Virus record (IMG/VR): IMGVR_UViG_3300043446_005562
Span: 186,001-250,000 of that record
Reading direction: 5' to 3' (one strand)
DNA: 64,000 nucleotides
Positions 42,788 to 60,859 of the stretch are shown piece after piece; within the stretch, counting starts at the first letter, position 1; each line of letters opens with the position of its first letter. Both the position numbers and the translations under genes were made by a program. The notes under the pieces were generated by a model that saw only the letters and a program-made list of their open reading frames with translations, had not been told where the DNA came from and ran no database searches.

Positions 42788-42823
42788 TGATTTATTATAT
42801 TATACTACCTTAGTCAAAAAAAT

Positions 42824-44661: not shown

Positions 44662-44735
44662 AGTATATTGTTTGTTTTATTAGCGTTTGGTTCTTTATTT
44701 TACTATTAATAATGATAAGGATCTTATCCATTTTA

Positions 44736-45638: not shown

Positions 45639-45640
45639 AG

Positions 45641-46351
45641 TTATTTTTTCTTTAAGACTATTTTTAAGTTATCATAGTGATCGTAGTGATTACCAATTAA
45701 CTCCCATTCTATTCTGCCAGCCAGCGCCTCTTGATATAGATGTGCGCCCTTGCCGATCATTGGATATTGAATAGCTACATTACTCTCGGTTCCATTCTGA
45801 AACCATTGTAGCAAACTATTATTTCTCCAATTGTCATCAATTATTATGATACTGCCAGGTTTCATCAGCCTCTCGATTGCTGTGAATTCTTTCCATACAT
45901 GAAGCGCGCTCGGAAAAGGATCGAACAGCTGAAAATCATAACTATCTAGATGAATGATATTTGGGATGATTGGAGGAGTCTTCAAGAATTCTATTGAGTC
46001 TTGACAATAGGTTTTGTACTTTAGATTAGGTAGTTGAGTTTTAAAAATAATTTCACTATTTTCGCAGGCTGACTGATCTAGATCGACCGAATGCATTTGC
46101 CCACCGTATTGATCTATTGCGTGCGCAAAAAATAATCCAAATAGTCCATACTCCAGATGACCACTAACGCCAGTTTCTATTAAATTAATTTCGTCAAATT
46201 GAAAATTCTCGGAAAGACAATCGACTAGTGTGTTCATCTGACGTACTCTTAACTGATATCCCTTATGATTATAATAGTCTTCTACCTTATCCTCAAGATA
46301 TTGATTGTACTGTACAATTGAATTCAATAGGATCTGCTTCAAATTTTTCAT
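45641..46351 (-). CDS. Class I SAM-dependent methyltransferase
   Basis: LIETG, SVDLD, DSIEFL, IHLDSYD, IIIDD. Confidence 0.7.
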   Translation of the reverse strand: MKNLKQILLNSIVQYNQYLEDKVEDYYNHKGYQLRVRQMNTLVDCLSENFQFDEINLIETGVSGHLEYGLFGLFFAHAIDQYGGQMHSVDLDQSACENSEIIFKTQLPNLKYKTYCQDSIEFLKTPPIIPNIIHLDSYDFQLFDPFPSALHVWKEFTAIERLMKPGSIIIIDDNWRNNSLLQWFQNGTESNVAIQYPMIGKGAHLYQEALAGRIEWELIGNHYDHYDNLKIVLKKK

Positions 46352-47325
46352 GATGTAATTTGATTTTTTTGAATAAGGAAGTTTTTACTTTTGAACAACT
46401 CTAAATTAGTTTCATTTAATTCTACCGACTTGGTTAGAGTATCATCAATATAAATTTTTATCTTGATAGGCAAAGTCATTTCACAAAGTCTTGTCATTGT
46501 CCACGACGATGGCGGCGGACACGAGTATGTACGAATAGTATCGTTGACTGAAACTGCAATATTATAGTTTCCGCCATGCTCATTGTAGATGAACAGCTCT
46601 AAATGATCAGCTGTCGTATTGTATATTGGAATGACCCAATTCAGGCCTCTAGAATTATGAGAATCTATTAAATCTATTTTTCCAGAAATTTTGACCAGAT
46701 TCGAAACATCATAATGATACACACTTCGGTTGTTTGAGACTAGTCTTGAAAAAATATGCTCAGTATGTTTGGATTCAGATTCACGTAACTCATTGATGAT
46801 TTTTTCATTAGTCATTGGTGATTCAATTTCTAGATTGTCTACTCGAAAAGCCCAGTATGGGCCATGCGTCCAACCTATTTCAAAGTCTCTGACTAAAACC
46901 GTATCGTAATCTATTAATATTTTACTTGCATCAGTGATAGCTTTAAGATTCTCTGGCAGTAAATCGTACTCAACATAGTGTAAATTTCGATAGCCATTGA
47001 ATTTTGCAAAATTAATTGAATTATAGATCATTCCGTATACGGCCAAATGAGTGCTCTTTGAGAAGATCAATGTTGAATTTATAAAAAAATCAGGGTGATT
47101 AAATTCAAAAGAATTTGTAAGATCAAAGTCTTCAAGAATATTGTTGAATCTATCGTATATTACAAAATCAACAAGTTCACAAAAGGTTTCACCAATTGGG
47201 CAATGACTCATTATCAATAAATCGTAAGACTTTCGATAGTCCTGTAATTTTAATAATAACTCAAGTAAGATTTGCCTTTTTTCCGGAGTCGGACAGTGCG
47301 CCGAAATTGCTATTAGTTCTTTCAT
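46348..47325 (-). CDS. Hypothetical glycosylation-island protein (paralogue of 42824-43819)
   Basis: See paralogue. Confidence 0.6.
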   Translation of the reverse strand: MKELIAISAHCPTPEKRQILLELLLKLQDYRKSYDLLIMSHCPIGETFCELVDFVIYDRFNNILEDFDLTNSFEFNHPDFFINSTLIFSKSTHLAVYGMIYNSINFAKFNGYRNLHYVEYDLLPENLKAITDASKILIDYDTVLVRDFEIGWTHGPYWAFRVDNLEIESPMTNEKIINELRESESKHTEHIFSRLVSNNRSVYHYDVSNLVKISGKIDLIDSHNSRGLNWVIPIYNTTADHLELFIYNEHGGNYNIAVSVNDTIRTYSCPPPSSWTMTRLCEMTLPIKIKIYIDDTLTKSVELNETNLELFKSKNFLIQKNQITS

Positions 47326-47918
47326 ACTTTAAGAGCGGGAGTTCCAATATAGGTTCCAGGTTGATCGATATTTTTAGTTACGCCAGCGTTCATTCCAATT
47401 ACAGCATCATCACATACTGATAATTTTTGTTTGATACATGATCGAGTACCGAAGTAAACTCGATTACCGATCGTTTCATTTCCTGAAATTTGTACACCTG
47501 GTGCAGTTGTAAAATAATCTCCGATTATGCAATCATGACCGATTGTAGTTATTAAATTTATGTGAGCGTGTTTACCTATTTTTACATTAGTTGTTATTAT
47601 AGAGCCAGCGCAAATAATGCTACCTTCCCCAATTTCAACGTCCGGCCCATGAATTTGAGCGGACGAATTGATGTGAGTAAAAAATTTAGTATTGGCTGGC
47701 AAACTTTCTACGATTCGCTGTCTGTGATTTGAGTCAGCTATTGCGACGACTAACGTATATTCAAGAGGATCAAATTTAGATAGAGGTAGAATCAGTGGAT
47801 CACTTCCATTAAAGTATGCATCATCTACGAAAAAAACCGTATTTTCTCGTTCACTCGGGTTTAGACTCCAGTATACTTCTCTACCAAATCCTCCTGCTCC
47901 AACTATTCCCTTTCTCAT
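47322..47918 (-). CDS. Sugar O/N-acetyltransferase, NeuD/PglD family
   Basis: GAGGFGREV, hexapeptide repeats, GHDC, GTPA. Confidence 0.9.
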   Translation of the reverse strand: MRKGIVGAGGFGREVYWSLNPSERENTVFFVDDAYFNGSDPLILPLSKFDPLEYTLVVAIADSNHRQRIVESLPANTKFFTHINSSAQIHGPDVEIGEGSIICAGSIITTNVKIGKHAHINLITTIGHDCIIGDYFTTAPGVQISGNETIGNRVYFGTRSCIKQKLSVCDDAVIGMNAGVTKNIDQPGTYIGTPALKV

Positions 47919-48544
47919 TGATTATAAATTTCAAATTTTGATAGATCCGGATATGGCAATTCTAGATCTGCCTGTTTTTTCTTGGAACCATCGAGATTGT
48001 AAAACTGATTCATTAATAAAAGACCTCGAGCCGCCAGTTCAGGCATCATGTAAAAATTCCAACCGAGCATGTCAAAGTGATCATCATGATACGAACACTC
48101 TCTACGACCAGAATATCTTGCACGTTTGAACCAATGATATGCTTCTAAGTTATCGGTTAAGATTGCACCGCCCTTACTTAATTTGAAGTGCTTGTACGGC
48201 CCAGTGAATGAAATACACATGTGAGTGCCGGGCTTGTACATGTCAGCAGTGAAGCTCAGTGCTGAATCCCAAACTCGGGTTGGTTCTAGTTGATACGCGC
48301 CTTTGATTGTTTTGCCCTCAACTGGTCTAAATTTAACCTTTGCACCAGCGTGAATGATTTCGCATGGGACTGAAGGATAGGTTCTGGCCGGAATGGTTAT
48401 CTCCTGACCAGTAACTTTTTCATAGTAGAGCGCAAGGAATAGAGCATTACTTTGATTATCCACAGTAATACAGTAAGGTGCACCAGTGTAGTCACATAAA
48501 GCTTTTTCAAAGTCTTCGGTTATTTTATAGACACCATTTGCCAT
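47915..48544 (-). CDS. Compact DegT/DnrJ/EryC1/StrS aminotransferase
   Basis: NQSNALFLAL, IPARTY, DSA, SFTGPYKH (catalytic Lys), GGAILTD, GWNFYM. Confidence 0.8.
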   Translation of the reverse strand: MANGVYKITEDFEKALCDYTGAPYCITVDNQSNALFLALYYEKVTGQEITIPARTYPSVPCEIIHAGAKVKFRPVEGKTIKGAYQLEPTRVWDSALSFTADMYKPGTHMCISFTGPYKHFKLSKGGAILTDNLEAYHWFKRARYSGRRECSYHDDHFDMLGWNFYMMPELAARGLLLMNQFYNLDGSKKKQADLELPYPDLSKFEIYNQ

Positions 48545-50334: not shown

Positions 50335-50739
50335 CTAAAGTTTCCCATTCTTTTTATTTAACTCCCTAATTTGCTGAAGCACCCAGCGCTGAGCCTCGTC
50401 CGCATGTTTGGTGGACTTGTTATTGGCTGTAATTTCATACGGATGATTATCGTAGTTACGGCCATACCTTTCAAAATAGTCATCGTACTTTTCAAAGATC
50501 GGCTGCCTGAAATGAGTGTACTCATGGATCACGGTCGTGACCCAATCCTTAAGCGTCTTGTGCCGCTTTGGATTAAGTAGAATTAGATTGTCTAATTCGT
50601 CGTAACTACCCAAGTAGTCAACTCGAGAATCCAACTTTATGCGTAGAGTTTCAAGATCCGCGAATCTGCTTGGGCCGTACTTTTCAATGCACCAGTCCAG
50701 GGCAAGAAGAGCACTTTTTCTGGAGATAAGCTTAACCAT
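50335..50739 (-). CDS. Zincin-like metallopeptidase domain protein
   Basis: IHEYTH...HPYE. Confidence 0.6.
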   Translation of the reverse strand: MVKLISRKSALLALDWCIEKYGPSRFADLETLRIKLDSRVDYLGSYDELDNLILLNPKRHKTLKDWVTTVIHEYTHFRQPIFEKYDDYFERYGRNYDNHPYEITANNKSTKHADEAQRWVLQQIRELNKKNGKL

Positions 50740-50826: not shown

Positions 50827-51657
50827 ATGGCACTTCTAAAAAACGGATCCTCTGGCCCAGAGGTTTCTAAGCTCCAGTCATTCCTGGGCATCCCAGCGGA
50901 CGGCCAATTTGGTCCAGGTACCGAAGCAAAGGTAAAGGAATGGCAGGCTGCACACGGGTTAAAGGCGGACGGTATTGTTGGAGAGGACACTCTTGCAAAA
51001 ATGCTTGGAACACCGGCCCCAGCGGCACAATCTCAAACGACGATTCCAGCGTCAAGTTTCAAACTGGAAAAATTAAAAGGGCATGTGCCCGATGCAGTCC
51101 TGGCTCAGATTCCTGACACGGCTGCAAAATTCGGAATTACTAATGTTTTAAGATTAGCTCATTTCTTGGCTCAATGCGGTCACGAATCCGGCGGATTTAA
51201 GGCGGTTAGTGAGAACCTAAATTACTCAGCGGACGGTCTAAAAAAGATCTTTCCAAAGTACTTTCCCGGCAATCTAAACGAGTCCTATGCCAGACAACCT
51301 GAAAAAATCGCTAACCGCGTCTATTCTTCAAGAATGGGTAACGGCGACGAGACCTCAGGCGATGGCTTTAAGTTTAGGGGCCGCGGCTACATTCAATTGA
51401 CTGGAAAGTCTAACTATTCAGCATTTGATAAGTTCGTGGACGACGATATCATCGGTAATCCAGATCTAGTATCCACAAAGTATCCATTGGCATCAGCTGC
51501 TTTCTTTTTTAACAATAACGGTCTATGGACGGTTTGCGATAAAGGAGCTGACGATGCAACGGTTACTGCAGTTACCAAACGAGTTAACGGTGGAACCATT
51601 GGATTAGAGGATCGTCTAAAGCACTTTAAGGAGTATTATTCTCTACTAACTACTTAA
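50827..51657 (+). CDS. Endolysin: peptidoglycan-binding domain plus GH19 lysozyme
   Basis: ADGQFGPGT/ADGIVG PG-binding repeats; AHFLAQCGHESGG, FRGRGYIQLTGKSNY, VNGG; late promoter upstream. Confidence 0.9.
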   Translation: MALLKNGSSGPEVSKLQSFLGIPADGQFGPGTEAKVKEWQAAHGLKADGIVGEDTLAKMLGTPAPAAQSQTTIPASSFKLEKLKGHVPDAVLAQIPDTAAKFGITNVLRLAHFLAQCGHESGGFKAVSENLNYSADGLKKIFPKYFPGNLNESYARQPEKIANRVYSSRMGNGDETSGDGFKFRGRGYIQLTGKSNYSAFDKFVDDDIIGNPDLVSTKYPLASAAFFFNNNGLWTVCDKGADDATVTAVTKRVNGGTIGLEDRLKHFKEYYSLLTT

Positions 51658-51671: not shown

Positions 51672-53600
51672 ATGAAGAATTTCTTTGTCGGATTAATAAT
51701 TGTACTTGCCTCTCTGGTTGGGTCCAACCCAGCCTTTGCTCAATCCGGTCCACCCGCTCCAGGCTGGGGGATCTATGCTCTAATCGACACCACCTATCAA
51801 GTTGGAACCTATTCGCAGGGTGTATCCCATGCAAAGATCACTCTTAAGAACAGCGTTACCACAAAATACACAGGTGTTCAGTTTAGACTCTTTTACGATA
51901 AAAACGCGTTTGCCTCTGCCTCAGTTGCACTAATTGGTTCAGCAACGAACCTTGACCTGCAAGCGGTTGACAATAACGCAAACGGTTATGTTACCATTTC
52001 TTTGGTTTACACGGGTAACAGCGCAACCTACACAATACCGGACGGCGAAAGATTTGACGTGACGTTCACTCACGTTGCGCCCAATGCCTTTTTTGGCTTA
52101 GCTTCAATCTCTAACCTAACCTGGTCCGGTGCACAATCATACAGCCAATACGCATCATCTCAACCTGGTCTAGATACCGTGCTTACTCTACACAGCTACA
52201 ACGGGCAATGGTTAAGGGATACCCTAAAATTCCACGGCACATTCACCAACGTTACCGGCTCACCCGCTAAAAACCTAACACTTTCTCTTGAAAAGAAGGT
52301 AAAGGTTGGAGGTACCTGGTCCCAGCACGCTGCCTATACTACGAATCTACAGGGTAAATTTTCAATCGCTGAATTGATTGACACAACCTATTACGATGTT
52401 CGCTTGGCAATCAAGGGCGATACGATGGGAGTTGGTAATGTAATCTCAACCGCTGATGCTCAACTAATTAATCAGTGGATTCTAGGCAACGGTACTCCAC
52501 AGGCCTGGGATTTTTATACTGGAGATATTAACGGCTCAAACGGTTTGACCATCACCGATGCCTATGGAGTTTTTGGTAGAATCTCTGGCCGATTCAACTC
52601 TTGGCCCAATGGCGTAAAGGATCTTAAGTTCTTTACTCAAGCCGAGTACGCTGCAATCACAGGCTCGCCAAATACAAACTACACCGCAACCTATACCGGC
52701 ACAACCAACTTCTACTACAATATTTTACCAGGTCAGCCAGATTCGGTTAATTATTATGTGTTGGTACCGGGCGATGCAAACGGTACAGGCTATCACATGG
52801 CTCGTTTGACACCTATCACGATCCTGCCAACGCCCAATCCCAATTATCCATCTCAATTGGAAAACATAATTGACATGACCGCTGAATACGACTTTCCAAC
52901 CGATCATGTTGAGATCAACATGCCTTCAATTAAGGTTACAGCCGGCAATCTGGTTGAAATTCCAGTAACCGTTAAAACCTTTGGTAAGCAGATCTCATCT
53001 CTACAATTGGGAATGTTATACGATTCAAGCGCTCTTGACTTTAAAGAATTAAGCAATTCGGACAAATCAATGCTGTGGCTCTCTTCAATCAATCCAATGG
53101 ACGGTATGGTTGAATGGTCGGGTTACGATCCATCTGCAAACAAGGACTACATGATTCCGGACGGCTACAATATCTTTACTCTTAAATTCATAGCTAAACA
53201 GCCACAATCAAACTGGTCTCAATCACCACTATGGACAACTCGTAAATTTACGGGCGATGCTAATTCCAAGGACATGAGCGTGACACCAACTAATGGAATC
53301 TTGATTGTTGCAAAGATGGCCGCTCCAATCGGTCCAAACGAGGCCGAGGAGTCAATGATCGTCTATCCTAATCCAACGACCGGCGATTTCAGCGTTAACT
53401 TCACAGTTAAGAACAGCGGTCACGTTACCCTCTACATTCTAAATAACCGCGGTATAGTTGAACACCTAATCTTAGACAAGGACATGCCAGAAGGAAACTA
53501 CGTTTACTCTTCAAACATTTCTAATCTAGCTTCAGGTCTTTACATTGCAACTCTACAGCAAAAAGGAGAGGTGAAGACCTCAAAAATTATTAAAGAATAA
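51672..53600 (+). CDS. Secreted cohesin-dockerin-cohesin protein with T9SS type A C-terminal sorting domain
   Basis: Signal peptide; cohesin-like GVQFRLFYD and LQLGMLYD; dockerin-like GDINGSNGLTITDA; C-terminal IVYPNPTT...SNLASGLY...KIIKE. Confidence 0.75.
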   Translation: MKNFFVGLIIVLASLVGSNPAFAQSGPPAPGWGIYALIDTTYQVGTYSQGVSHAKITLKNSVTTKYTGVQFRLFYDKNAFASASVALIGSATNLDLQAVDNNANGYVTISLVYTGNSATYTIPDGERFDVTFTHVAPNAFFGLASISNLTWSGAQSYSQYASSQPGLDTVLTLHSYNGQWLRDTLKFHGTFTNVTGSPAKNLTLSLEKKVKVGGTWSQHAAYTTNLQGKFSIAELIDTTYYDVRLAIKGDTMGVGNVISTADAQLINQWILGNGTPQAWDFYTGDINGSNGLTITDAYGVFGRISGRFNSWPNGVKDLKFFTQAEYAAITGSPNTNYTATYTGTTNFYYNILPGQPDSVNYYVLVPGDANGTGYHMARLTPITILPTPNPNYPSQLENIIDMTAEYDFPTDHVEINMPSIKVTAGNLVEIPVTVKTFGKQISSLQLGMLYDSSALDFKELSNSDKSMLWLSSINPMDGMVEWSGYDPSANKDYMIPDGYNIFTLKFIAKQPQSNWSQSPLWTTRKFTGDANSKDMSVTPTNGILIVAKMAAPIGPNEAEESMIVYPNPTTGDFSVNFTVKNSGHVTLYILNNRGIVEHLILDKDMPEGNYVYSSNISNLASGLYIATLQQKGEVKTSKIIKE

Positions 53601-53616
53601 AAAAACCAATAAAACC

Positions 53617-53946
53617 ATGTCAGAAGAAACAAACGTACAGGATCAAAATGACGGCACCTGGTCAGGTCTCAAGAAAACCTTGATCGCCACTTTAACTACC
53701 GTAATTACGGGAGGCGGTGTCTGGTTGGGAACCTTCCTTTATGGGGGGCATGAAGAACCCAAGGCCGAGCCAAAAACTGAACAGGCAGCACCAGCTCCTG
53801 CACCAGTTATTGTTAATGTTCAGCAAACTCAAGAGAACACTCAACAACAAAAAGCGGGTGGAACAACAACAATCATCAAGGAAAAGATTGTTGAGAAGCC
53901 AGCAAAGAAAGAAAAAAAGAGCGAGACTGAAGACTCTCCTTGGTAA
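53617..53946 (+). CDS. Single-TM protein with Pro/Gln/Lys-rich extension
   Basis: LIATLTTVITGGGVWLGTFLY. Confidence 0.6.
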   Translation: MSEETNVQDQNDGTWSGLKKTLIATLTTVITGGGVWLGTFLYGGHEEPKAEPKTEQAAPAPAPVIVNVQQTQENTQQQKAGGTTTIIKEKIVEKPAKKEKKSETEDSPW

Positions 53947-53962
53947 AAATACGTAATTTAAA

Positions 53963-54319
53963 ATGTCACTGAAAAAACTCTTAATTGGCGAAAACGCCTA
54001 CGTTAAGGTGGAAGACAAGAATCGCTTCTACTATATGTTACAACAAATGCAGGCCAATCGTTGGAAGATTACAGCGATCGTGTTGGGCCTGTTCTTCTTT
54101 ATTATTTTAGGTATCAATTCAGCCGTTTTCTTTGGAGTTACAATCCAAGAATCATGGAAGGAAATGTTACTAATTTTATTGGGAGCGTTTGTTGGTAATC
54201 TAAACAAGGTTGTTGATTACTGGTTTAATTCAGAAGATCGCGACAAGATGCTGATTCAAAAGGTAGATGAAGAGGACGGAACTTCGCTATCAAACGTAAC
54301 AACAAATAGCCCAGAATAA
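53963..54319 (+). CDS. Two-TM membrane protein (holin-like, uncertain)
   Basis: Two hydrophobic helices, then VDYWF and a charged tail. Confidence 0.5.
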   Translation: MSLKKLLIGENAYVKVEDKNRFYYMLQQMQANRWKITAIVLGLFFFIILGINSAVFFGVTIQESWKEMLLILLGAFVGNLNKVVDYWFNSEDRDKMLIQKVDEEDGTSLSNVTTNSPE

Positions 54320-54320
54320 C

Positions 54321-55040
54321 ATGAAAAAGCTAGCAATACTCTTTGCGCTTTTCCTAAATTCAGCCATGTGTGTTGCTCAGATTGGTTCAATCAAGTCTGA
54401 GCAATACCAAGCTGACTTTGAAAAGAAAATGTCGCTTGACTCTGTGCCCGAATACAAGGACACAATCAAGATTCCCGTGCAGATTCTAAAAATTGGAATC
54501 AGCTCGGATCTTTACGAAATGTATCCAGAATTAAAGGACAAGCGTGTTGGACTTGGTGTTACCAATATTGTGTTGGAATACCTAGAGTACACCAACCGAT
54601 TCGTCTTTACTGAGGATAAGTTGGAGATTAAGGAGCGCATGATTAATCAGTTCAAAGCATCGGACAAGGGATTCACCGAGAACAAAATGGACGGTCGTGG
54701 TAAGATCAAACTTGCAAAATACTTTGTCTATATTGAAGTTTACGATTTTTCGGTGTCAGACGATGAGGTTGTGAAGGTGAACGGCCAATCGCAAACAACC
54801 CAAATTACGAGACTTGGCTTACAGGTTAAATTCGTTGATGCTGAGACCGGCGAAATCATAATGGGCTCAGGACTGGGCGAGGCCAAGACAGTAAAAACGG
54901 TTTCAATCTTGGAAGGTATTGACGATACTGAAATTAAATTTAATCAATCCCATATTGGTATAACCACCAAAAAAGCTTTGGAAACCGCTGCTGCTCGAAT
55001 AGTTAATCGCATGATAAAAAAGGGAATTTTTAAATCTTAA
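54321..55040 (+). CDS. CsgG-like (curli assembly/transport family) protein
   Basis: Signal peptide; LGVTNIVLEYL..TNRF, YFVYIEVYDF, GLQVKFVDAETGEI, KKALETA. Confidence 0.7.
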   Translation: MKKLAILFALFLNSAMCVAQIGSIKSEQYQADFEKKMSLDSVPEYKDTIKIPVQILKIGISSDLYEMYPELKDKRVGLGVTNIVLEYLEYTNRFVFTEDKLEIKERMINQFKASDKGFTENKMDGRGKIKLAKYFVYIEVYDFSVSDDEVVKVNGQSQTTQITRLGLQVKFVDAETGEIIMGSGLGEAKTVKTVSILEGIDDTEIKFNQSHIGITTKKALETAAARIVNRMIKKGIFKS

Positions 55041-56623
55041 TGCATGTCAAGAAAATCATATTCATACTATTTTTAATTATCTCAAATGTTGCAATCGGTC
55101 AAATCAATTATTCATACATTGACCCTTGTACTGGGATAAAGAAAACAATTCAGGTGCCGTCTAACGGCGTGACCGTTACCTATTACGGTCAAATACACAC
55201 ATTTCAACCGACCGATTTTTACAGCGGAGTTTTTGAGAATTGGGCAAATGGCGTTTACGCATCATTCGGCTCCAATAATCCATGCGCAAGCATTGTCGGC
55301 ATGCCAACCGGTCTAACCGTTGCTCAGAGCAGCGCGTTGAATTTTCTAGGAATAATTAATTCGCTCGATGCGGTCAAGGATTTAGCGGGAGGAGGAACGA
55401 ATTTTCTTTCTGGTACAATTGAGAGTACTAAAAAATCTGAAAAAAAGGAAAAGAAAGATGATAATACTAACTCTACTTCTGTTAATGCTGGTGCCGCTAG
55501 CGGTCAAACTGGTAATTCGGCAACATCGCCGCAATCTGGGAATAAAGGCGAAGCTCAATCGGCTGGTGGATCTCAAGGCCAATCTGGAGGCGAGGCTCAA
55601 TCAAGCGGTGGGAGCCAACCGGCTAGCCAAAAGCCTGATCAAACGGGCGGATCTGGATCGGGCCAAGCTGGCGGAGGAAGCGGATCAAACGGCAGCGGCT
55701 CACCACAAAATCCAGGATCGGAAACCTCAGGTGGATCAGCCCAGGGATCAACAACCGGATCAGGTGGACAAACAACTGGCTCGAGTTCAAATAATAGTTC
55801 AACTTCTCAAAATGGGTCTTCCTCTGGAGGAGGCTCACAGGGAGGCGGACAAAATGATGCAACAAAAAAAGTAACCACAACACCCGCTGGGGAATCCAAA
55901 ACGGATCAGCCATCTGGCTCGGGTAAAACCGATCTGGTTGGATCGTCAGTTAATAATGTGCAGCGAGTTGATGCAAAAAACGGCAATCGACCCAATATCA
56001 TAGCCTCAAGCGATTTTGTTGGATTTAATTTTAAAAATTCAGATGTCTCATACGGCGGTAAATTTACCGGAGGCTATACCTCAGCCAGATGGGACGGCGC
56101 TCGAGCTCATGGACTACTCATTGACTACACGACCGCACTAAAGGGTCCAAACATTAGCGGCTTCTATGCATTCATTAAGCCCAAAAGAATTGACCTTATC
56201 TCAACCACGCTAACTCTTGGTCTTGACATAAAAAAATCAATTTACGGAACGATTGCGCTGGGTCAAATGTGGGATATCAACAAGAAGAAAAACGTTAAAG
56301 CTGTTTATCTTTTAACTGGCTCTTACGGTAGTGTCTATGATCAAGCATTCATTGGTACGGCAGCAATTGCGGGCGGCATGTGGGATCTTAAACTCGGTAA
56401 AAGAATTGATGCTAAAATAATGGGTCTCTATGTTTACGCACCGTATGTTAGCTATTACAACGATATTTTGCTAAAGTCGCCTCACGTTGTTTTACCAATT
56501 CTTGGGTGCAATATTAAAATCACAAATAAATTCAAGATAAACATTAACGGTGGTGGCGCTTGGGCTCTAAAAGAAAACACCCTAAATTACACAGTAATGA
56601 TGGGTACCAGATTATTGTTATGA
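55040..56623 (+). CDS. Secreted protein: N-terminal domain, Ser/Gly/Gln low-complexity linker, C-terminal outer-membrane beta-barrel-like domain
   Basis: Signal peptide; about 140-aa S/G/Q tract; alternating amphipathic strands at the C-terminus. Confidence 0.65.
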   Translation: MHVKKIIFILFLIISNVAIGQINYSYIDPCTGIKKTIQVPSNGVTVTYYGQIHTFQPTDFYSGVFENWANGVYASFGSNNPCASIVGMPTGLTVAQSSALNFLGIINSLDAVKDLAGGGTNFLSGTIESTKKSEKKEKKDDNTNSTSVNAGAASGQTGNSATSPQSGNKGEAQSAGGSQGQSGGEAQSSGGSQPASQKPDQTGGSGSGQAGGGSGSNGSGSPQNPGSETSGGSAQGSTTGSGGQTTGSSSNNSSTSQNGSSSGGGSQGGGQNDATKKVTTTPAGESKTDQPSGSGKTDLVGSSVNNVQRVDAKNGNRPNIIASSDFVGFNFKNSDVSYGGKFTGGYTSARWDGARAHGLLIDYTTALKGPNISGFYAFIKPKRIDLISTTLTLGLDIKKSIYGTIALGQMWDINKKKNVKAVYLLTGSYGSVYDQAFIGTAAIAGGMWDLKLGKRIDAKIMGLYVYAPYVSYYNDILLKSPHVVLPILGCNIKITNKFKININGGGAWALKENTLNYTVMMGTRLLL

Positions 56624-57804
56624 GAAAACTTATATTACTGCTAGTTACGGCGATTGCGCTTTCAATTACACTCACGGCTCAGCCTTTTACCTATTCAGGT
56701 TACGTTTACGGCGCAAACGGCCAGGGTCTTCAAAACATTCCGGTCAAACTGTTTGGCAAACGAACTGACCCATACGAGATTAGCTTTCCAACCTACAGCC
56801 CAGCTGGTGCATTTAATTCCGGCACGGTGATTCCATCTTCCGACGACGCGACTCATGGACCCTTTAATATAGGCTTCACCTTTAGCTTCTTTGGTAATAA
56901 CTACACCCAATTCTATGTTGGGTCAAACGGCTGGATTGGTTTTTCTTCTGCTCAAACAACAGGTTATACTGCTCAATACATTCCAAATGCAGGTTCGCCA
57001 AAGAACGTTATCATGGCGGACTGGGAAGACCTCTATCCAGGTTCAGCCAATATCTACTACACAACGGTTGGCACTTCGCCCAATCGTAAATTAATAGTTT
57101 CATTCAATGCAGTGCCGCATTACGGCTGTCGTACTAATCTGCACACATTTCAATTTGTGCTGTACGAATCAAGCAATGTGATTGATGTCTATTATCAGGA
57201 CAAGCCCCTGTGCTCAGGCAATAACTCAACCGCAGGCTTGGTCAATATTGATAATACGAATGTCGTACCGGTTGGCGGCAAGAATGCCTCTGCCTGGTCG
57301 GCGACCAATTACGCAGTTCGATACACGCCAGCCGTGCCGGAAACTTCTTTTTCGCTAAAGGGTACCTATTCAACCAGTGCAACCGGTCAATACACAATAA
57401 ATCCAAATCTGGATGCACAGTCTTATCAATTTGAAATTCGACTAGAATCATTATCGGTTGCATTACCTACACCGACTGATGCGCAATATCCAACCGAGAT
57501 AAGTCTCTATAATATTACGCCAACCTCCAAGCTCTATTACACGATGGACGTCAACGGCGATGGCCGATTCACGGTCACGGATTCATACAATATCTATGCT
57601 CGCATAAATAACAGACCAGGTTTTTGGATCTCTCCAATTGCAGACTATCGAATATTCACACCAGCCCAGTGGACCACAATTAATTCAGGCACCACTGACA
57701 TGAGGGGTACGATTCCCGGTGTTCAGTCAATGATCATCTTCACTCCAACAAACGGTGGTTCAACCAATTTTTATCTGTTGAGAACTGGCATAAAAACACA
57801 ATAA
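56620..57804 (+). CDS. Secreted protein with nidogen-like domain and dockerin-like motif (true start probably 56620)
   Basis: MRKLILLLVTA signal; NIGFTFSFFGNNYTQFYVGSNGWIGF; MDVNGDGRFTVTDSY. Confidence 0.7.
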   Translation: MRKLILLLVTAIALSITLTAQPFTYSGYVYGANGQGLQNIPVKLFGKRTDPYEISFPTYSPAGAFNSGTVIPSSDDATHGPFNIGFTFSFFGNNYTQFYVGSNGWIGFSSAQTTGYTAQYIPNAGSPKNVIMADWEDLYPGSANIYYTTVGTSPNRKLIVSFNAVPHYGCRTNLHTFQFVLYESSNVIDVYYQDKPLCSGNNSTAGLVNIDNTNVVPVGGKNASAWSATNYAVRYTPAVPETSFSLKGTYSTSATGQYTINPNLDAQSYQFEIRLESLSVALPTPTDAQYPTEISLYNITPTSKLYYTMDVNGDGRFTVTDSYNIYARINNRPGFWISPIADYRIFTPAQWTTINSGTTDMRGTIPGVQSMIIFTPTNGGSTNFYLLRTGIKTQ

Positions 57805-57809
57805 CTAAC

Positions 57810-58271
57810 ATGAAAAAACTAATCTTTACCCTATTAATTTTTATCTCAACCCAAGTCACGGCCTTTTCCCAAACTGATCGATGTTTTAGCATTGATACTG
57901 TGTACTCAACTGCAAAGTTTAGAGAATTGGGCAAACGCGATATTAGGTTCGGTGTCAAGCAGATGACCGAGGAATTGATCTCTGAGAAGTTCTGTATTAA
58001 GCCAGGGTCGTCAAGTGTCAAGGTTGAAATATTCTATTTTGGCTTGCCGAGAAAGGAACTTAGGCTGCTTGGAGTTGGACGAGAAGAGGCAATCACGCAG
58101 GTCGGAATCAGGCTGCACATTGATGGTAAAGCATACGAGGGCTATGGCGAATCGGAAACTGAGATTAGAACAATAATGTTGGAGGTGGTGGAAGAGTCTG
58201 TACCTTTTTCCAAAATGACTCTGTCCAATTCCATTAAAAAAGCCCTGGTTCAATGCGTTTCGCAATTATAG
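57810..58271 (+). CDS. Secreted protein, possibly distant CsgG-like fold
   Basis: Signal peptide; FGVKQMTEEL...GESET...NSIKKAL pattern parallels 54321-55040. Confidence 0.5.
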   Translation: MKKLIFTLLIFISTQVTAFSQTDRCFSIDTVYSTAKFRELGKRDIRFGVKQMTEELISEKFCIKPGSSSVKVEIFYFGLPRKELRLLGVGREEAITQVGIRLHIDGKAYEGYGESETEIRTIMLEVVEESVPFSKMTLSNSIKKALVQCVSQL

Positions 58272-58714
58272 CTCTAATCGTTTGGCTGGCAGCTGGCTCA
58301 GCACAGGCTCAAATTCAAATACCCGATGTGGGAGACGGCTGGCGACCAAAGGTCGACTCGGCGATTGCTGTGATTAAGGCCCATGATCCAGTCGCTCACA
58401 AGCGCCTGCTTGAAAACTGTAAATCGATTCAATTCATTATCGCGGGAGAGTCAACCACTCAACCGCCCAGCGTAATTGCAATATCGGTAAACGACATGCG
58501 ATTAAACTCAATCAACAACATTGCTGCCATTCTGGTACACGAGTCGTATCATTTGTACATTGCAAATCAGGGCATAAAGCTTGATCCAAACGTTGAGGAG
58601 TATCAGGCCTACTCAATAGAATATGAATTTTTATTTAAAATTCCTGACCTTGAGGATTGGCTATTCGAGAATGCGCTCAACCGCATGCTCTATTATAAAT
58701 CCAAGATAAAATGA
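58253..58714 (+). CDS. Secreted zincin-like metalloprotease
   Basis: Signal peptide; VHESYH...EEYQAY. Confidence 0.6.
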   Translation: MRFAIIALIVWLAAGSAQAQIQIPDVGDGWRPKVDSAIAVIKAHDPVAHKRLLENCKSIQFIIAGESTTQPPSVIAISVNDMRLNSINNIAAILVHESYHLYIANQGIKLDPNVEEYQAYSIEYEFLFKIPDLEDWLFENALNRMLYYKSKIK

Positions 58715-59496
58715 AAACCTTAATTACATTGGCTTTAATGCTAGCATCAATTGCAGCAGTCGGTCAGACAAGTCCACCTCCACCGCCCAAGGCGCCAGCT
58801 GAGGATTTTGGCAATACTCAAAATAATATTATGGGCGCGCAGGCCAGATCTTTTGGCGGCGGCTCAATAATTAGACCCAACCCAGTGCTGACCTCAGCCG
58901 ATTTTAGTTTCATACAGAATCCAACCTTTGAATCGGGTTGGCGCTATGGTACTGGCTTGGGATACAGTAATGTAAATTTGGGTAAGGGTTATGGTGTCAA
59001 CGTTATTTTGACATTTGACTTGACCCAACAAACCTATTCGGGTTTCTATCGCAATGGAGACTGGTACTTTCATCTCAACTTTGGAAAAATGGGTCTTGTC
59101 AGAAACATTGGCGCAAGCGCAACCAGAGTTTGGGAATTCGATAAAACAACTGTCGGTGTACAGCTTGGAGTATCCGATGTTGAGAGCATGGATTTAAAAA
59201 ATCAGTATTACGTTGCGGTGCCCTATCTTGTTTTTCTAGCGGATCGAGAGATTAGATTAAGCAAAAGACTTGAATGGAAGCCTGAGATTTTCATAACTAC
59301 TTGTTCGCCATACTATGACATTGGTAAAAAATTTAGCAGCACATCCACAACATTCAACGCGGTCGTTGGCAACAACATCTCAATCGCAGTTCACAAGAAA
59401 TTCAGGCTAAATGTTAATTGGCGTGCAAATATGAACACAACTCCAAACTGGGGTGTCATGCACAACATTCTAGTCGGAACAACTTTAAAATTTTAA
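58711..59496 (+). CDS. Putative outer-membrane beta-barrel protein
   Basis: Signal peptide; amphipathic strands; C-terminal Phe (TTLKF). Confidence 0.6.
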   Translation: MKTLITLALMLASIAAVGQTSPPPPPKAPAEDFGNTQNNIMGAQARSFGGGSIIRPNPVLTSADFSFIQNPTFESGWRYGTGLGYSNVNLGKGYGVNVILTFDLTQQTYSGFYRNGDWYFHLNFGKMGLVRNIGASATRVWEFDKTTVGVQLGVSDVESMDLKNQYYVAVPYLVFLADREIRLSKRLEWKPEIFITTCSPYYDIGKKFSSTSTTFNAVVGNNISIAVHKKFRLNVNWRANMNTTPNWGVMHNILVGTTLKF

Positions 59497-59528
59497 ACCC
59501 AGATAAATATTATTAAAAAATAAAGAAT

Positions 59529-60119
59529 ATGAATTACACAAGAGAACAAATTGAAAAGGCGGTCAAGGCCAAGGGTTATGCATGGTTTGAGGGCGCAAAG
59601 GACTATGATGTCAATATTGTTGGTATTAGAAATTCTAGCACCGGCCAAAAGGTCACTAACGTGTTTGATGATCTGTTGACCGTGTCCTATAAATTAAACG
59701 GTGAATGGCACTTTCATGCCTGGGCCGCAACAACCGATCCCGGTAAAAAGGGGGTTATGGAGTATCATAATGCAGCTGGCGTTGCTCGACTGGTTGAGGG
59801 TCAATATCGTGGATCGCATGCAATCGGTCTACACCAGGGTAAGTACGAAGCCCTAAAGCAGGCTAAAAACGTCAAGGTGTATCGCGATGCAAATCGTGAT
59901 CTAACTTACGATGAAACCAAAATTCAGGAAGGAATCTTTGGAATCAACATTCACAAAGCTGGAGCGGACTCAACCTATGTTGAAAACTGGTCAGAAGGTT
60001 GTCAAGTATTTAAAAAGTCAGCGGACTTTGATCAGTTCTTGGCCATCTGTAAAAAATCACAAGCAATTCACGGTAATTCCTTTACCTATACGCTAATTGA
60101 ATCTGCGGACATTGTATGA
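59529..60119 (+). CDS. YkuD/L,D-transpeptidase-like cell-wall enzyme
   Basis: ATTDPG; GINIH...WSEGCQV His/Cys catalytic pattern. Confidence 0.6.
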   Translation: MNYTREQIEKAVKAKGYAWFEGAKDYDVNIVGIRNSSTGQKVTNVFDDLLTVSYKLNGEWHFHAWAATTDPGKKGVMEYHNAAGVARLVEGQYRGSHAIGLHQGKYEALKQAKNVKVYRDANRDLTYDETKIQEGIFGINIHKAGADSTYVENWSEGCQVFKKSADFDQFLAICKKSQAIHGNSFTYTLIESADIV

Positions 60120-60859
60120 GATTAATATTTCTATTACTACTAATTATTCCTATTGAAGCCTTTAGTCAAACTAAGGGCTTCATTTCAATAGGTGGCGATT
60201 GGAATTCAGGTAACTTTCAGTCGATTGGCCTGACACTGCGGTCGGAGATTAAAAAGGACAGTGGCAACTATCAATGGGCGATTGCGCCCAACTTTAGATG
60301 GAGCGAACAGTCAAAGGTTGGTGGAGGAGACCTAAATCTCTATGAGAACGAGCTCTACTTGACAGGTAATTTGACACGATCATTGGTCAAGAGCTGGAAG
60401 GTGATAGGCTTTTCCGAAAACGAAAAATCCTATTTAAGAAAAATAGACTTGCGATCAGCTGCTGGTTTTGGAATTGGGGTTGATCTACTCAATCTAAAAG
60501 GAGTTCGGCTCTCAGTGTCTGAACTTATTCTACCTGAATACTATTGGTCAAGCCTGAACACTGAACTAAATAACTTTACGGTTAGGGGCTCGACCCGATT
60601 CAAGCTTGAGATCAGCGGTAAGATTTTAAAGTTCTCATCAGTCAATCTAATTCAACCGGCCATCTATTCAAGTCGACAGGTTAGCTTTGCGGATAATCTA
60701 AACATTCGCAGTAATTCTTCAATCTCTACCAAGTTAAAGGATCGCTATGAGGTTGGTGTGTTACATACCTTAACCTATCAGGGATATCCCTACTACATCA
60801 ATAAGACGATTGTGCCAATGCAACAGGGCGCATCCATCTTTGTTAAGTGTACTTTTTAA
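60116..60859 (+). CDS. DUF481-like outer-membrane beta-barrel protein
   Basis: Signal peptide; GNFQS, ENEKSYLRKIDLR, C-terminal Phe. Confidence 0.6.
   Translation: MRLIFLLLLIIPIEAFSQTKGFISIGGDWNSGNFQSIGLTLRSEIKKDSGNYQWAIAPNFRWSEQSKVGGGDLNLYENELYLTGNLTRSLVKSWKVIGFSENEKSYLRKIDLRSAAGFGIGVDLLNLKGVRLSVSELILPEYYWSSLNTELNNFTVRGSTRFKLEISGKILKFSSVNLIQPAIYSSRQVSFADNLNIRSNSSISTKLKDRYEVGVLHTLTYQGYPYYINKTIVPMQQGASIFVKCTF

What the first reader, a model, noticed from the sequence alone, without database searches (positions are those of the whole stretch)
51672..60859. Phage-encoded cell-surface assembly operon: cohesin/dockerin cargo, CsgG-like proteins, OM beta-barrels and proteases
Seen: eleven co-directional genes right after the GH19 endolysin, eight of them with signal peptides. 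They comprise a cohesin-dockerin-cohesin protein with T9SS CTD, a nidogen-like/dockerin protein, one clear and one possible CsgG-like protein, three predicted beta-barrels (one with a long Ser/Gly linker), a secreted HExxH protease, two small membrane proteins and a YkuD-like enzyme. Established: cohesin-dockerin pairs build multiprotein surface scaffolds; CsgG-family proteins form or assist OM channels; T9SS CTD cargo is exported and surface-anchored in Bacteroidota. Inference: a dedicated system that builds a scaffolded complex on the infected cell surface, for example for superinfection exclusion, aggregation, anti-grazing or assisted lysis. This is not a standard phage module.
Basis: partly seen in the sequence, partly recalled or inferred. 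Interest (0 to 1): 0.85.

Follow-up and report, generated by a model that had tools for sequence, protein, structure and literature searches.

The report
Phage-encoded cell-envelope lectin-display module
A jumbo phage of Flavobacterium-type bacteria carries a conserved gene set that sends about eight of its own proteins into the host's outer envelope. They include a cohesin/dockerin scaffold, swappable sugar-binding heads and two CsgG-like proteins, and the set probably re-dresses the surface of the infected cell, although its purpose is untested.

Summary
The eleven genes are real, tightly packed and phage-borne. They are not host contamination. Eight products have Sec signal peptides that end just before a Gln, the Bacteroidota "Q-rule".

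Domain calls that held up:
- g1: cohesin plus a type-A T9SS sorting domain
- g4: a CsgG fold, best PDB match E. coli CsgG
- g7: a short paralogue of g4
- g5 and g11: 12-strand-type outer-membrane barrels (g9: weak pairwise evidence only)
- g8: an invariant HExxH motif

The dockerin has moderate support. The "first cohesin", the nidogen-like domain and the YkuD fold rest on weak evidence or motifs only.

Synteny across 80 IMG/VR contigs, marine TARA contigs and the cultured Flavobacterium phage "immuto" defines a core. It is the cohesin/CTD scaffold, an inner-membrane tether (g2), g4, the g5 barrel and g7, plus one slot whose dockerin protein carries interchangeable lectin-type heads. The endolysin, g10, g9 and g11 are looser neighbours.

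In immuto and the TARA contigs the module lies among early replication genes. In immuto it is about 8 kb from the endolysin, which argues against a lysis role.

My best reading is a phage-built display complex on the infected cell's outer membrane. It would use host Sec and T9SS and serve receptor masking or adhesion. The function is untested. I found no published description of the module.

The parts
50827..51657 (+). g0: endolysin (PG_binding_1 + GH19). A neighbour, not part of the core.
   Evidence: Pfam hits. Its position and strand vary among related loci. In phage immuto the endolysin lies about 8 kb from the module.
51672..53600 (+). g1: scaffold protein. Layout: signal peptide, N-domain (possibly cohesin-like), CarboxypepD_reg-like sandwich, dockerin module, cohesin, type-A T9SS sorting domain.
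   Evidence: Cohesin 44.8 bits and Por_Secre_tail 39.4 bits. TIGR04183 type A. In the family, CTD in 27/36, Cohesin in 24/36 and Dockerin_1 in 7/36 members. PDB profile hits to cohesins and CTDs. N-domain against cohesin: E 2e-4, probability 47%. Split into two genes in immuto, gp014 and gp015.
53617..53946 (+). g2: single-pass, N-in inner-membrane protein. Its low-complexity Pro/Ala and Lys/Glu-rich periplasmic tail ends in a conserved D-[S/A]-P-W motif.
   Evidence: Sequence and family alignment. Present in almost all related loci, directly upstream of g4 or g3.
53963..54319 (+). g3: two-TM inner-membrane protein with a strongly conserved second TM and an acidic post-TM segment.
   Evidence: Replaced by the unrelated small two-TM family F10 in some loci, and not detected in immuto.
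54321..55040 (+). g4: CsgG-fold protein and the most conserved member of the module. It has an SPI-type signal peptide here; marine relatives carry a lipobox.
   Evidence: AF2 pLDDT 84.3, pTM 0.77. Foldseek top hits are CsgG structures 4uv3, 4uv2 and 6l7a, E 1e-8, TM 0.55-0.60. The family profile reaches proteins whose matched region is Pfam CsgG at 45.8 bits. 74% mean column identity. Lipobox in P0134 and P0129.
55040..56623 (+). g5: signal peptide, ~100-aa two-Cys N-domain, ~170-aa Ser/Gly/Gln-rich linker and a C-terminal ~225-aa beta-barrel. This is an autotransporter-like layout. Its start overlaps the g4 stop by one base.
   Evidence: ESM Atlas structure neighbours: autotransporter beta-domain TM 0.75-0.76, OmpL 0.71, DUF481 0.70. 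No Pfam or PDB sequence hit. Always follows g4. Linker length varies, family members 366-639 aa.
56620..57804 (+). g6: occupant of the variable slot. Layout: signal peptide, CarboxypepD_reg-like motif, head domain (nidogen-like, unverified), ~150-aa dockerin module. No T9SS sorting domain.
   Evidence: Shares the dockerin module with g1, 29% identity, E 1.8e-11. In other loci the slot holds Lectin_C, PA14, Laminin_G_3, GEVED or Ig_7 heads, with Dockerin_1 hits. The slot protein is 30% identical where g4 is 95% and g5 94%.
57810..58271 (+). g7: short secreted paralogue of g4 (CsgG/LpoB-type fold).
   Evidence: hhalign A1 against A2: probability 97.6%, E 3.9e-12. Present in nearly all loci; placed first in the module in distant relatives.
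58253..58714 (+). g8: small secreted HExxH (gluzincin-like) putative metalloprotease.
   Evidence: VHESxHL, EE and a further Glu are invariant in 22 homologues. No Pfam or NCBIfam family. Present in 37 of 80 loci, sometimes on the other strand.
58711..59496 (+). g9: extra barrel-only paralogue of the g5 C-terminal domain. Ends in Phe.
   Evidence: Clusters with the g5 family by BLAST. Pairwise alignment over 268 columns, E 0.029. Rare as a separate gene.
59529..60119 (+). g10: cytoplasmic putative peptidoglycan enzyme with an H...SxGC motif. The YkuD-like fold is unverified.
   Evidence: phrog_3000 E 5e-39 and phrog_33083 'endolysin' E 6e-16. Motif invariant in 7 homologues. In several related loci it sits directly beside the endolysin g0.
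60116..60859 (+). g11: DUF481 outer-membrane beta-barrel. Ends in Phe.
   Evidence: Pfam DUF481 28.5 bits against a cutoff of 21.1. Found next to g7 or g8 in 22 loci.

Best explanation
This is a phage-encoded envelope-remodelling module. It uses the host's Sec and type IX secretion systems to assemble a lectin-display complex on the outer membrane of the infected Bacteroidota cell.

Shown:
- Eight products are Sec substrates with Bacteroidota-style signal peptides.
- g1 is type-A T9SS cargo. It carries a cohesin and a dockerin module, and possibly a second cohesin.
- One slot encodes a dockerin-module protein whose head is exchanged among relatives (C-type lectin, PA14, LamG, GEVED, or nidogen-like here).
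- g4 and g7 are CsgG-fold paralogues.
- g5 is a barrel with an N-terminal domain on a long flexible linker.
- g2 is an inner-membrane tether with a conserved C-terminal motif.

Inferred:
- g1 is exported and retained at the surface. Its cohesin(s) capture the dockerin of the head protein, and of other g1 copies.
- g4 and g7, as ring-forming CsgG-like proteins, work with the translationally coupled g5 barrel. Together they form the outer-membrane base or conduit that lets the CTD-less partners (g6, g8) reach or anchor at the surface. g2 links this base to the inner membrane.
- The likely purpose is to coat the infected cell with glycan-binding heads. That would mask receptors, giving superinfection exclusion and less loss of progeny on debris. 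Alternatively it would stick the infected cell to particles or neighbouring hosts.

g0 and g10 are lysis enzymes that merely sit alongside.
For: - Phage context: portal, DNA polymerase, primase, helicases and RNA ligase are in the window, with topoisomerase II next door.
- The same gene order occurs in 80 IMG/VR contigs, including 250-430 kb ones.
- It also occurs in marine TARA contigs and in cultured Flavobacterium phage immuto.
- Signal peptides ending before Gln.
- Cohesin and type-A CTD. Dockerin evidence.
- g1 is split in immuto into a dockerin-bearing half and a cohesin-CTD half. This is what one expects if the two associate in trans.
- The slot carries lectin-type heads and is the fastest-changing gene: 30% identity where g4 is 95% and g5 94%.
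- CsgG fold of g4, and g7 as its paralogue. Lipobox versions of g4 in marine relatives point to the outer membrane.
- g5 barrel with an autotransporter-like layout. The g4 stop and g5 start overlap.
- Early-gene neighbourhood in immuto and TARA contigs: RecA, exonuclease, DnaB, plus RNR in immuto.
- Precedent for variable phage-encoded type-A T9SS cargo: PMC7468147.
Against: - No experiment or multimer model shows cohesin-dockerin pairing, g4 oligomerisation or surface exposure.
- The dockerin calls are sub-threshold for the window proteins themselves.
- Where the slot gene is replaced, its dockerin module drops to ~33% identity while the g1 cohesin stays ~83%. So there is no covariation signal.
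- g4 lacks a direct Pfam CsgG hit and, in this clade, the lipid anchor that CsgG needs.
- CsgG-fold proteins also serve as non-channel periplasmic domains. Cellular relatives of g4 are fused to kinases or caspases.
- None of the curli partners CsgA, B, E or F was detected.
- How g6 crosses the outer membrane is pure inference.
- The lectin head of immuto has no paralogue elsewhere in its genome, so there is no link to the phage's own receptor-binding proteins.
- In the window and many loci the module abuts the endolysin and holin-like genes.
Confidence: 0.45

Rival explanations
1. Outer-membrane disruption arm of the lysis cassette. g2 (inner-membrane tether) and g4/g7 (outer-membrane partners), together with the barrels, protease and other enzymes, would act after holin and endolysin to breach the outer membrane. 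This would be a Bacteroidota substitute for spanins.
For: - The module starts right after the GH19 endolysin in the window and in many loci.
- Holin-like two-TM genes (F10, F16) lie inside or beside it, and next to g0.
- g10 resembles an endolysin domain.
- g2 has i-spanin-like topology with a conserved C-terminal motif.
- g4 is a lipoprotein in marine relatives.
- Accessory nuclease, lipase-like (F45, read by eye only) and protease genes travel with it.
Against: - In immuto and the TARA contigs the module sits among RecA, exonuclease and DnaB (plus RNR in immuto). In immuto the endolysin is ~8 kb away.
- The position and strand of g0 vary, while g1-g7 stay together.
- A T9SS-exported cohesin scaffold and fast-changing lectin heads have no obvious role in lysis.
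- The periplasmic part of g2 is low-complexity, not coiled-coil.
- g4 is not lipidated in this clade.
Confidence: 0.15
2. Nutrient-capture auxiliary module. A cellulosome-like, T9SS-displayed scaffold would bind polysaccharides or particles to feed the infected cell during a long jumbo-phage latent period.
For: - Cohesin/dockerin architecture and carbohydrate-binding-type heads: Lectin_C, PA14, Laminin_G_3.
- 'Cryophage' carries variable T9SS cargo that includes an endoglucanase and a GH39 (PMC7468147).
Against: - No glycoside hydrolase or other catalytic carbohydrate-active domain was found in any slot variant or module gene scanned.
- This reading gives no role to the conserved core g2, g4, g5 and g7.
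Confidence: 0.12
3. A periplasmic or outer-membrane defence-type module without surface display. The g4/g7/g5/g2 complex, with the secreted nuclease in relatives, would block or degrade DNA injected by competing phages. Alternatively it would jam the host T9SS and gliding apparatus that flavobacterial phages use as a receptor. In this reading g1 acts as a plug rather than a scaffold.
For: - Early-gene location.
- A signal-peptide-bearing Endonuclease_NS gene inside or beside the module in immuto, the TARA contigs and several IMG/VR loci.
- g4 is very strongly conserved, as expected if it contacts a conserved host component.
Against: - It does not explain the rapidly exchanged lectin heads.
- The nuclease is absent from the window's module.
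- There is no similarity to known superinfection-exclusion proteins.
Confidence: 0.15
4. Virion or assembly components, such as decoration or fibre proteins that use cohesin-dockerin contacts.
For: Lectin-type and Ig-like domains are common in phage fibres and decorations (established knowledge). ESM Atlas structure neighbours of the g6 cluster include viral SprB/CHU_C-type proteins at TM ~0.48.
Against: - Eight cleavable Sec signal peptides, a T9SS sorting domain, and outer-membrane barrels ending in Phe.
- The module lies ~40 kb from the portal gene in the window and among replication genes in immuto.
Confidence: 0.03

Closest known systems
Curli secretion channel CsgG (E. coli; PDB 4UV3, 4UV2, 6L7A) and other CsgG-fold envelope proteins (HfaB, PelC, LptE, FlgT, LpoB)
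   Same: - g4's model matches CsgG best and over its full length. g7 is a shorter paralogue.
- Marine relatives of g4 are lipoproteins.
- g4 is paired with an outer-membrane barrel, as PelC is with PelB and LptE with LptD (the pairing comparison is from established knowledge).
   Different: - No direct Pfam CsgG hit.
- No lipobox in this clade.
- No CsgA, B, E or F partners.
- Oligomer and transmembrane hairpins are untested.
- The closest cellular relatives of g4 are linked to caspases or kinases, not to curli.
Cohesin-dockerin scaffolds (cellulosomes and non-cellulosomal cohesin/dockerin proteins)
   Same: - A scaffold protein with cohesin(s) and an anchoring module.
- Separate subunits carrying dockerin modules.
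- An adaptor-like arrangement when g1 is split, as in immuto gp014 and gp015.
   Different: - Encoded by a lytic phage.
- Anchored through a T9SS type-A sorting domain rather than SLH or sortase.
- Subunits carry lectin-type binding heads, not enzymes.
- The dockerins are degenerate and pairing is unproven.
Phage-encoded T9SS cargo of 'Cryophage' (Bellas et al. 2020, PMC7468147)
   Same: Phage genes with type-A T9SS sorting domains, highly variable between phage variants and including a PA14 protein. They are presumed to hijack the host T9SS.
   Different: The Cryophage genes were described as individual flexible cargo genes. Here a single cargo protein is embedded in a conserved multi-gene module with CsgG-fold proteins, barrels and membrane tethers. 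The variable part lacks the sorting domain.
Type Va autotransporters
   Same: g5 has a signal peptide, an N-terminal domain, a long linker and a C-terminal barrel. The barrel resembles 12-strand autotransporter beta-domains in predicted structure.
   Different: - No Pfam Autotransporter hit.
- The linker is a long disordered Ser/Gly-rich stretch.
- The 'passenger' is only ~100 aa.
- The system is unusual for Bacteroidota, and its orientation is untested.
Phage spanins and superinfection-exclusion envelope proteins (e.g. T5 Llp, T4 Imm/Sp)
   Same: Phage-encoded proteins are placed in the host envelope. An inner-membrane tether and an outer-membrane partner are encoded side by side.
   Different: No sequence or architectural membership, and far more components. 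g2 lacks coiled coils and g4 is much larger than an o-spanin.

Membership tests
CsgG family (curli-type outer-membrane channel) | CsgG alpha/beta fold | tested here: met
   AF2 model pLDDT 84.3. The Foldseek top 23 PDB hits are all CsgG, E 1.3e-8 to 4e-6, TM 0.43-0.62. The family profile reaches proteins whose matched region scores Pfam CsgG at 45.8 bits.
CsgG family (curli-type outer-membrane channel) | Direct match to Pfam PF03783 above the gathering score | tested here: not met
   No CsgG hit for g4 or g7 at E<=0.1. No hit to CsgG chains with sequence profiles against the PDB.
CsgG family (curli-type outer-membrane channel) | N-terminal lipobox Cys (lipoprotein) | tested here: not met
   The window's Cys17 is not conserved, and all clade members end the signal peptide with ..A/G-Q. 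Marine and cellular relatives do have a lipobox.
CsgG family (curli-type outer-membrane channel) | Nonameric ring with transmembrane beta-hairpins and a constriction loop | not testable with these tools
   Only a monomer model is available, with three 17-18-residue strands at 134-195. No multimer prediction and no coordinates. The invariant YP..L...GLG segment lies between the first strand and the following helix, where CsgG has its constriction loop; that placement is inference from memory.
CsgG family (curli-type outer-membrane channel) | Curli partners CsgA/B/E/F in the locus | tested here: not met
   No such Pfam or NCBIfam hit in any of the eleven products.
Cohesin-dockerin system | Cohesin domain | tested here: met
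   Pfam Cohesin 44.8 bits against a cutoff of 24.1 in g1. Found in 24 of 36 family members. PDB profile hits to scaffoldin cohesins, E 7e-4.
Cohesin-dockerin system | Dockerin with Ca-binding repeat(s) | tested here: inconclusive
   - Window g1: E 0.065 to dockerin 4uyp_B.
- Dockerin_1 in 7 of 36 g1 homologues, best E 2.2e-4, and in slot proteins at 20.2 and 16.5 bits against a cutoff of 22.9.
- One canonical D-x-N-x-[DS]-G...D loop is visible in g1 and g6, and D285, N287 and D296 are (nearly) invariant.
Cohesin-dockerin system | Physical and specific pairing of the two modules | not testable with these tools
   No multimer prediction was available. Indirect evidence: g1 is split into a dockerin half and a cohesin half in immuto. 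No covariation was seen.
T9SS type-A cargo | C-terminal sorting domain (PF18962 / TIGR04183) plus an N-terminal Sec signal | tested here: met
   39.4 bits (cutoff 27) and 40.1 bits (cutoff 23). Signal peptide. CTD found in 27 of 36 homologues.
T9SS type-A cargo | Host that possesses a T9SS | tested here: inconclusive
   The cultured relative infects Flavobacterium sp. LMO8. MAG bins holding the module are Flavobacterium, Sediminibacterium and 'Bacteroidetes'. That Flavobacterium has a T9SS is established knowledge and was not tested here. The host of this particular contig is unknown.
Type Va autotransporter | C-terminal 12-strand beta-domain (PF03797) preceded by a passenger | tested here: inconclusive
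   Structure neighbours at TM 0.75-0.76 to PF03797 clusters, but equally to OmpL and DUF481. No Pfam hit in 40 family members.
DUF481 outer-membrane barrel (g11) | Pfam PF04338 above the gathering score | tested here: met
   28.5 bits against 21.1.
Two-component spanin | Type-II inner-membrane protein with a coiled-coil periplasmic domain, plus a small outer-membrane lipoprotein | tested here: not met
   g2 is type II, but its periplasmic part is a low-complexity Pro/Ala and Lys/Glu tail. No lipoprotein is present in the window's module.
YkuD L,D-transpeptidase fold (g10) | Pfam YkuD match; catalytic His and Ser-x-Gly-Cys | tested here: inconclusive
   No Pfam, NCBIfam or PDB hit. An invariant H...WSEGC motif. 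PHROG endolysin-domain hit, E 6e-16.
NIDO (nidogen-like) domain (g6) | Pfam PF06119 match | tested here: not met
   No Pfam hit at E<=0.1. Only a language-model neighbour at 0.77, a cluster with NIDO and Dockerin_1, which is below the tool's reliability level.
Zincin metalloprotease (g8) | HExxH plus a third ligand, conserved | tested here: met
   H96, E97, H100, E115, E116 and E123 are invariant in 22 sequences. No named family.

The most novel reading that the evidence does not exclude
The core genes g2, g4, g7 and g5 are a self-contained, phage-encoded outer-membrane export and anchoring machine. It would comprise a CsgG-like ring, an autotransporter-like barrel and an inner-membrane tether. 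It would carry CTD-less dockerin-lectin subunits to the surface, where they plug into a T9SS-delivered cohesin scaffold. If so, a lytic phage builds a cellulosome-style lectin coat on its host, and this would be a new class of virus-encoded secretion and display system.
Probability: 0.22. Interest if true: 0.88.

Novelty: new variant of a known kind. Interest (0 to 1): 0.72.

Why it matters
- Phages are known to alter host surfaces with single proteins, and one report describes phage-borne T9SS cargo.
- Here a multi-protein envelope complex is conserved across a large, abundant clade of freshwater and marine Bacteroidota phages. The g4 family alone has about 6,000 homologues in metagenomes.
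- The complex combines a cohesin/dockerin scaffold, exchangeable sugar-binding heads, CsgG-fold proteins and outer-membrane barrels.
- If it is a display system, it is a new way for a virus to control what the infected cell binds to or is recognised by. That bears on superinfection, host range, particle attachment and carbon flow in lakes and seas.
- It would also extend cohesin-dockerin and CsgG-fold biology into viruses.
- A culturable pair exists (phage immuto with Flavobacterium sp. LMO8), so the question is directly testable.

Tried and rejected
- **Host-contig chimera: rejected.** The window has portal, polymerase, primase and topoisomerase II genes. GC content is uniform. The module recurs in 80 viral contigs and in a cultured phage. 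Among 185,579 species genomes it occurs only on four MAG contigs.
- **Megablast of the 9.2-kb region against 50,697 phage genomes:** no match. Protein-level search was needed to find immuto.
- **Sequence-only links of g4 to solved CsgG structures failed**, with the single sequence and with two profiles.
- **First AF2 model from a shallow alignment was unusable**, pLDDT 51. A broader alignment that included cellular relatives gave pLDDT 84.
- **g5/g9 family:** no Pfam or PDB sequence hit.
- **Diversity-generating retroelement as the source of lectin variation:** no template/variable repeat pair in three loci.
- **Lectin head as a copy of the phage's own receptor-binding protein:** no second copy in immuto apart from the shared dockerin module.
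- **Cohesin-dockerin covariation:** not seen.
- **Genome-collection scan with the broad alignment A5:** A1 was used instead.
- **Literature searches for phage plus cohesin/dockerin/T9SS, and for jumbo phage plus CsgG:** no description of this module.
- **Sigma-70 promoter and terminator scans:** uninformative, with counts near shuffled expectation.

Full report
**What is in the sequence**

Eleven + strand ORFs lie between 51672 and 60859. They are separated by 0-33 bases or overlap by 1-19 bases. They directly follow a PG_binding_1+GH19 endolysin at 50827-51657. I call them g1 to g11, and the endolysin g0.

The block is a + strand island between - strand genes. Upstream are a small metallopeptidase-like protein, a metallophosphoesterase and a DegT-type aminotransferase. 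Downstream are a 4HBT thioesterase and two topoisomerase II subunits.

The window is clearly phage. It has a portal protein, DNA polymerase, primase, helicases and RNA ligase, and 19 tRNA genes. GC content is even across the module and its flanks. No ORF in the block needs a stop read-through.

**Signal peptides and topology**

g1, g4, g5, g6, g7, g8, g9 and g11 each start with a short basic stretch and a strong hydrophobic core. This is followed by a small-x-small site and then Gln. The same ...A/S/G-Q ending is conserved in the family alignments of g4, g7 and g8.

A Gln at +1 of signal-peptidase-I substrates is the Bacteroidota "Q-rule". That is established knowledge and was not tested here.

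g2 is a single-pass N-in protein. g3 has two TM segments. g10 has no export signal.

**Domain calls**

- **g1.** Pfam Cohesin at residues 414-542 and the T9SS sorting domain at 564-640 are both above threshold. NCBIfam types the sorting domain as type A. Among 36 homologues, 27 show the sorting domain, 24 the cohesin and 7 a Dockerin_1 hit; single members hit CarboxypepD_reg or transthyretin-like models. A family profile finds solved cohesins and T9SS sorting domains.
- **g1 dockerin.** The window protein's own dockerin evidence is weak, E 0.065 to a ScaB dockerin. However, the Asp/Asn positions of one Ca-binding loop are invariant or nearly so in the family.
- **g1 N-terminal domain.** It aligns to the second cohesin with hhalign E 2e-4 and probability 47%. 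Control domain pairs gave E 0.07-0.6. It is possibly a divergent cohesin, but this is not established.
- **g6.** It shares a ~145-residue dockerin-containing module with g1, E 1.8e-11. Its "nidogen-like" head has no profile support.
- **g11.** DUF481.
- **g8.** An invariant VHESxHL motif plus Glu residues.
- **g10.** It matches a PHROG of unknown function and the C-terminal domain of a PHROG "endolysin" family. It keeps an H...SxGC motif. No YkuD profile hit was obtained.

**The CsgG-like proteins**

g4 has no Pfam, NCBIfam or PDB sequence hit. Three independent lines place it in the CsgG/LpoB superfamily:

1. A language-model search and its structure neighbours point to CsgG/HfaB/LpoB clusters.
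2. A profile of the phage family, searched against 1.84 billion representatives, reaches cellular proteins. Their matched regions score Pfam CsgG at 45.8 and 32.5 bits.
3. An AlphaFold2 model built on the widened alignment (pLDDT 84, pTM 0.77) has E. coli CsgG as its 23 best PDB matches. These cover essentially the full length, ahead of FlgT, PelC, LptE and HpaA.

g7 is a shorter paralogue of g4, with hhalign probability 97.6%.

In this freshwater clade g4 is not a lipoprotein, because the Cys in its signal peptide is not conserved. Marine phage relatives and cellular relatives do carry a lipobox. That supports an outer-membrane location for the family. Whether g4 forms a pore could not be tested.

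**The barrels**

The last ~225 residues of g5 resemble 12-strand barrels in predicted structure: autotransporter beta-domains, OmpL/KdgM and DUF481.

Upstream of the barrel are a conserved ~100-residue domain with two Cys and a Ser/Gly/Gln-rich linker of variable length. This is an autotransporter-like layout.

g9 is a barrel-only relative of the g5 C-terminus. g9 and g11 end in Phe, a common outer-membrane-protein terminus.

**Conservation and the true extent of the module**

A search with g4 returned 80 IMG/VR loci. The window's own contig is among them (252,618 bp), and others range from 250 to 434 kb.

tblastn and all-against-all clustering show the order g1-g2-g3-g4-g5-[slot]-g7-g8 in close relatives. 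Distant relatives have g7-g1-...-g2-(g3/F10)-g4-g5.

- g4 followed by g5 is nearly universal.
- g8 occurs in about half of the loci.
- g11 is often next to g7 or g8.
- g9 as a separate gene is rare.
- g0 and g10 move about, change strand, and in several loci sit directly beside each other.
- Small two-TM holin-like families (F10, F16) appear between g2/g3 and g4 or next to g0.

Among 50,697 deposited phage genomes, only Flavobacterium phage vB_FspM_immuto has the module (160 kb; host Flavobacterium sp. LMO8). Its gene order is:

| immuto gene | Content |
|---|---|
| gp012 | nuclease |
| gp013 | C-type lectin plus dockerin |
| gp014 | g1 N-terminal half |
| gp015 | g1 cohesin-CTD half |
| gp016 | g2 |
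| gp017 | g4 |
| gp018 | g5 |
| gp019 | g7 |

This block follows RecA, an exonuclease, DnaB and ribonucleotide reductase. It is about 8 kb from the endolysin.

TARA marine contigs show the same module after RecA, exonuclease and DnaB.

In 185,579 species genomes the g4 family was found only on four MAG contigs. These were labelled Bacteroidetes (a 254-kb contig), Flavobacterium (two) and Sediminibacterium.

**The variable slot**

The gene after g5 always encodes a signal-peptide protein with the dockerin module, but its head differs. It is unassigned (nidogen-like?) here. Elsewhere it is Lectin_C, Lectin_C+Ig_7, PA14, Lectin_C+Laminin_G_3 or GEVED.

It is by far the fastest-changing gene. In L046 against L049, g4, g5, g7 and g1 are 95, 94, 88 and 83% identical, while the slot proteins are ~30% identical with different heads.

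No catalytic carbohydrate-active domain was seen. No DGR-type repeat was found.

The slot's dockerin module also diverges (~33%) while the g1 cohesin does not. So there is no covariation signal for specific pairing.

**Interpretation**

The shown facts fit a complex assembled in the outer envelope of the infected cell:

- A T9SS-exported cohesin/dockerin scaffold (g1).
- Dockerin-bearing, lectin-type heads that are exchanged like host-interaction genes.
- A strongly conserved base made of two CsgG-fold proteins (g4, g7), a translationally coupled barrel with a tethered domain (g5), and an inner-membrane tether with a conserved C-terminal motif (g2).

The split of g1 in immuto into a dockerin half and a cohesin-CTD half is what one expects if these modules bind in trans.

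Three steps are inference:

- That g4, g7 and g5 provide the route or anchor for the partners that lack a sorting domain.
- That the heads end up outside the cell.
- That the purpose is receptor masking or adhesion.

The early-gene neighbourhood in immuto and the marine contigs favours an infection-time function such as exclusion or adhesion. It disfavours a lysis function. This holds even though the module abuts lysis genes in the window.

**Comparison with known systems**

Phage-borne type-A T9SS cargo has one published precedent, the variable endoglucanase, GH39 and PA14 genes of "Cryophage" (PMC7468147).

The GenBank record of immuto labels gp013 and gp015 as lectin and cohesin proteins without comment. 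One BFVD entry from an uncultured phage is auto-named CsgG.

My literature searches found no description of the module.

It is therefore a new multi-component variant of phage-driven host-surface modification, built from known domain families. Membership of g4 in the curli CsgG family proper is not supported: there is no lipobox, no curli partners and no direct profile hit. The fold is the same.

**Verdict**

Function is unproven but testable in a cultured system.

Noticed in passing
window 25168-25499, 31146-31224, 37059-38938, 42700-42787 (- strand): Nineteen tRNA genes, most in one array. This is a large complement, typical of jumbo phages.
   Followed up: no
window 41677-42306 (-): A 209-aa protein matches Pfam Tad6, a type I Thoeris inhibitor, at 70 bits. 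It is a candidate anti-defence gene.
   Followed up: no
window ~42800-48544 (-): A low-GC island (0.35-0.37, against ~0.42 elsewhere) with sugar-modification genes: a PglD-like hexapeptide acetyltransferase, a DegT-type aminotransferase (short, possibly truncated), and FkbM and other methyltransferases. Wbp/PorR-type aminotransferase and acetyltransferase genes make the sugar that links T9SS cargo to LPS in Porphyromonas (from memory). A link to g1 anchoring is conceivable, but this flank is not conserved with the module.
   Followed up: partly
window 50335-50739 (-): A small 134-aa protein with weak hits to putative metallopeptidase families (DUF6782, aspzincin). It is conserved beside the module in several loci: L005-L009, L026 and L081.
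   Followed up: partly
window 17790-19763 (-): A 657-aa ATP-dependent protease (phrog_4871, E 3e-250) encoded by the phage.
   Followed up: no
window 6630-8087 (+): The DNA polymerase ORF (485 aa) matches only the C-terminal part (positions 500-838 of 856) of the PHROG polymerase profile. This suggests a split or partial polymerase gene.
   Followed up: no
L016:9334-9984, L059:5645-6193, L063:8579-9112, L067:9445-9999: In some relatives g3 carries a C-terminal extension with DGDG-type (Ca-binding-like) repeats and a Cys-rich HxxC...CxxC motif. The window's g3 lacks it.
   Followed up: no
L039:12212-14923: The slot protein and g7 are one 903-aa ORF in this locus. This is either a gene fusion or a sequencing frameshift.
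   Followed up: no
L092/L093:6001-6729 and neighbours; proteins P0217, P0218, P0225, P0245: Cellular relatives of g4 are lipoproteins. They are encoded next to, or fused with, Peptidase_C14 (caspase)+PEGA proteins, or form the C-terminal domain of Ser/Thr kinases. This looks like an uncharacterised bacterial use of the CsgG fold.
   Followed up: partly
L085:6202-6780 (immuto gp012); L086:5782-6402; family F19 in L002, L003, L021, L048, L051, L055, L066-L071: A signal-peptide-bearing Endonuclease_NS-type nuclease gene travels with the module in many relatives but is absent from the window. A class-3-lipase-like gene (F45; called by eye from the sequence, no profile search) follows the barrel in six distant loci.
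   Followed up: partly
L029:5390-5450 and 6161-6221: The direct-repeat search picked up two tRNA-like sequences upstream of the module in a related phage.
   Followed up: no
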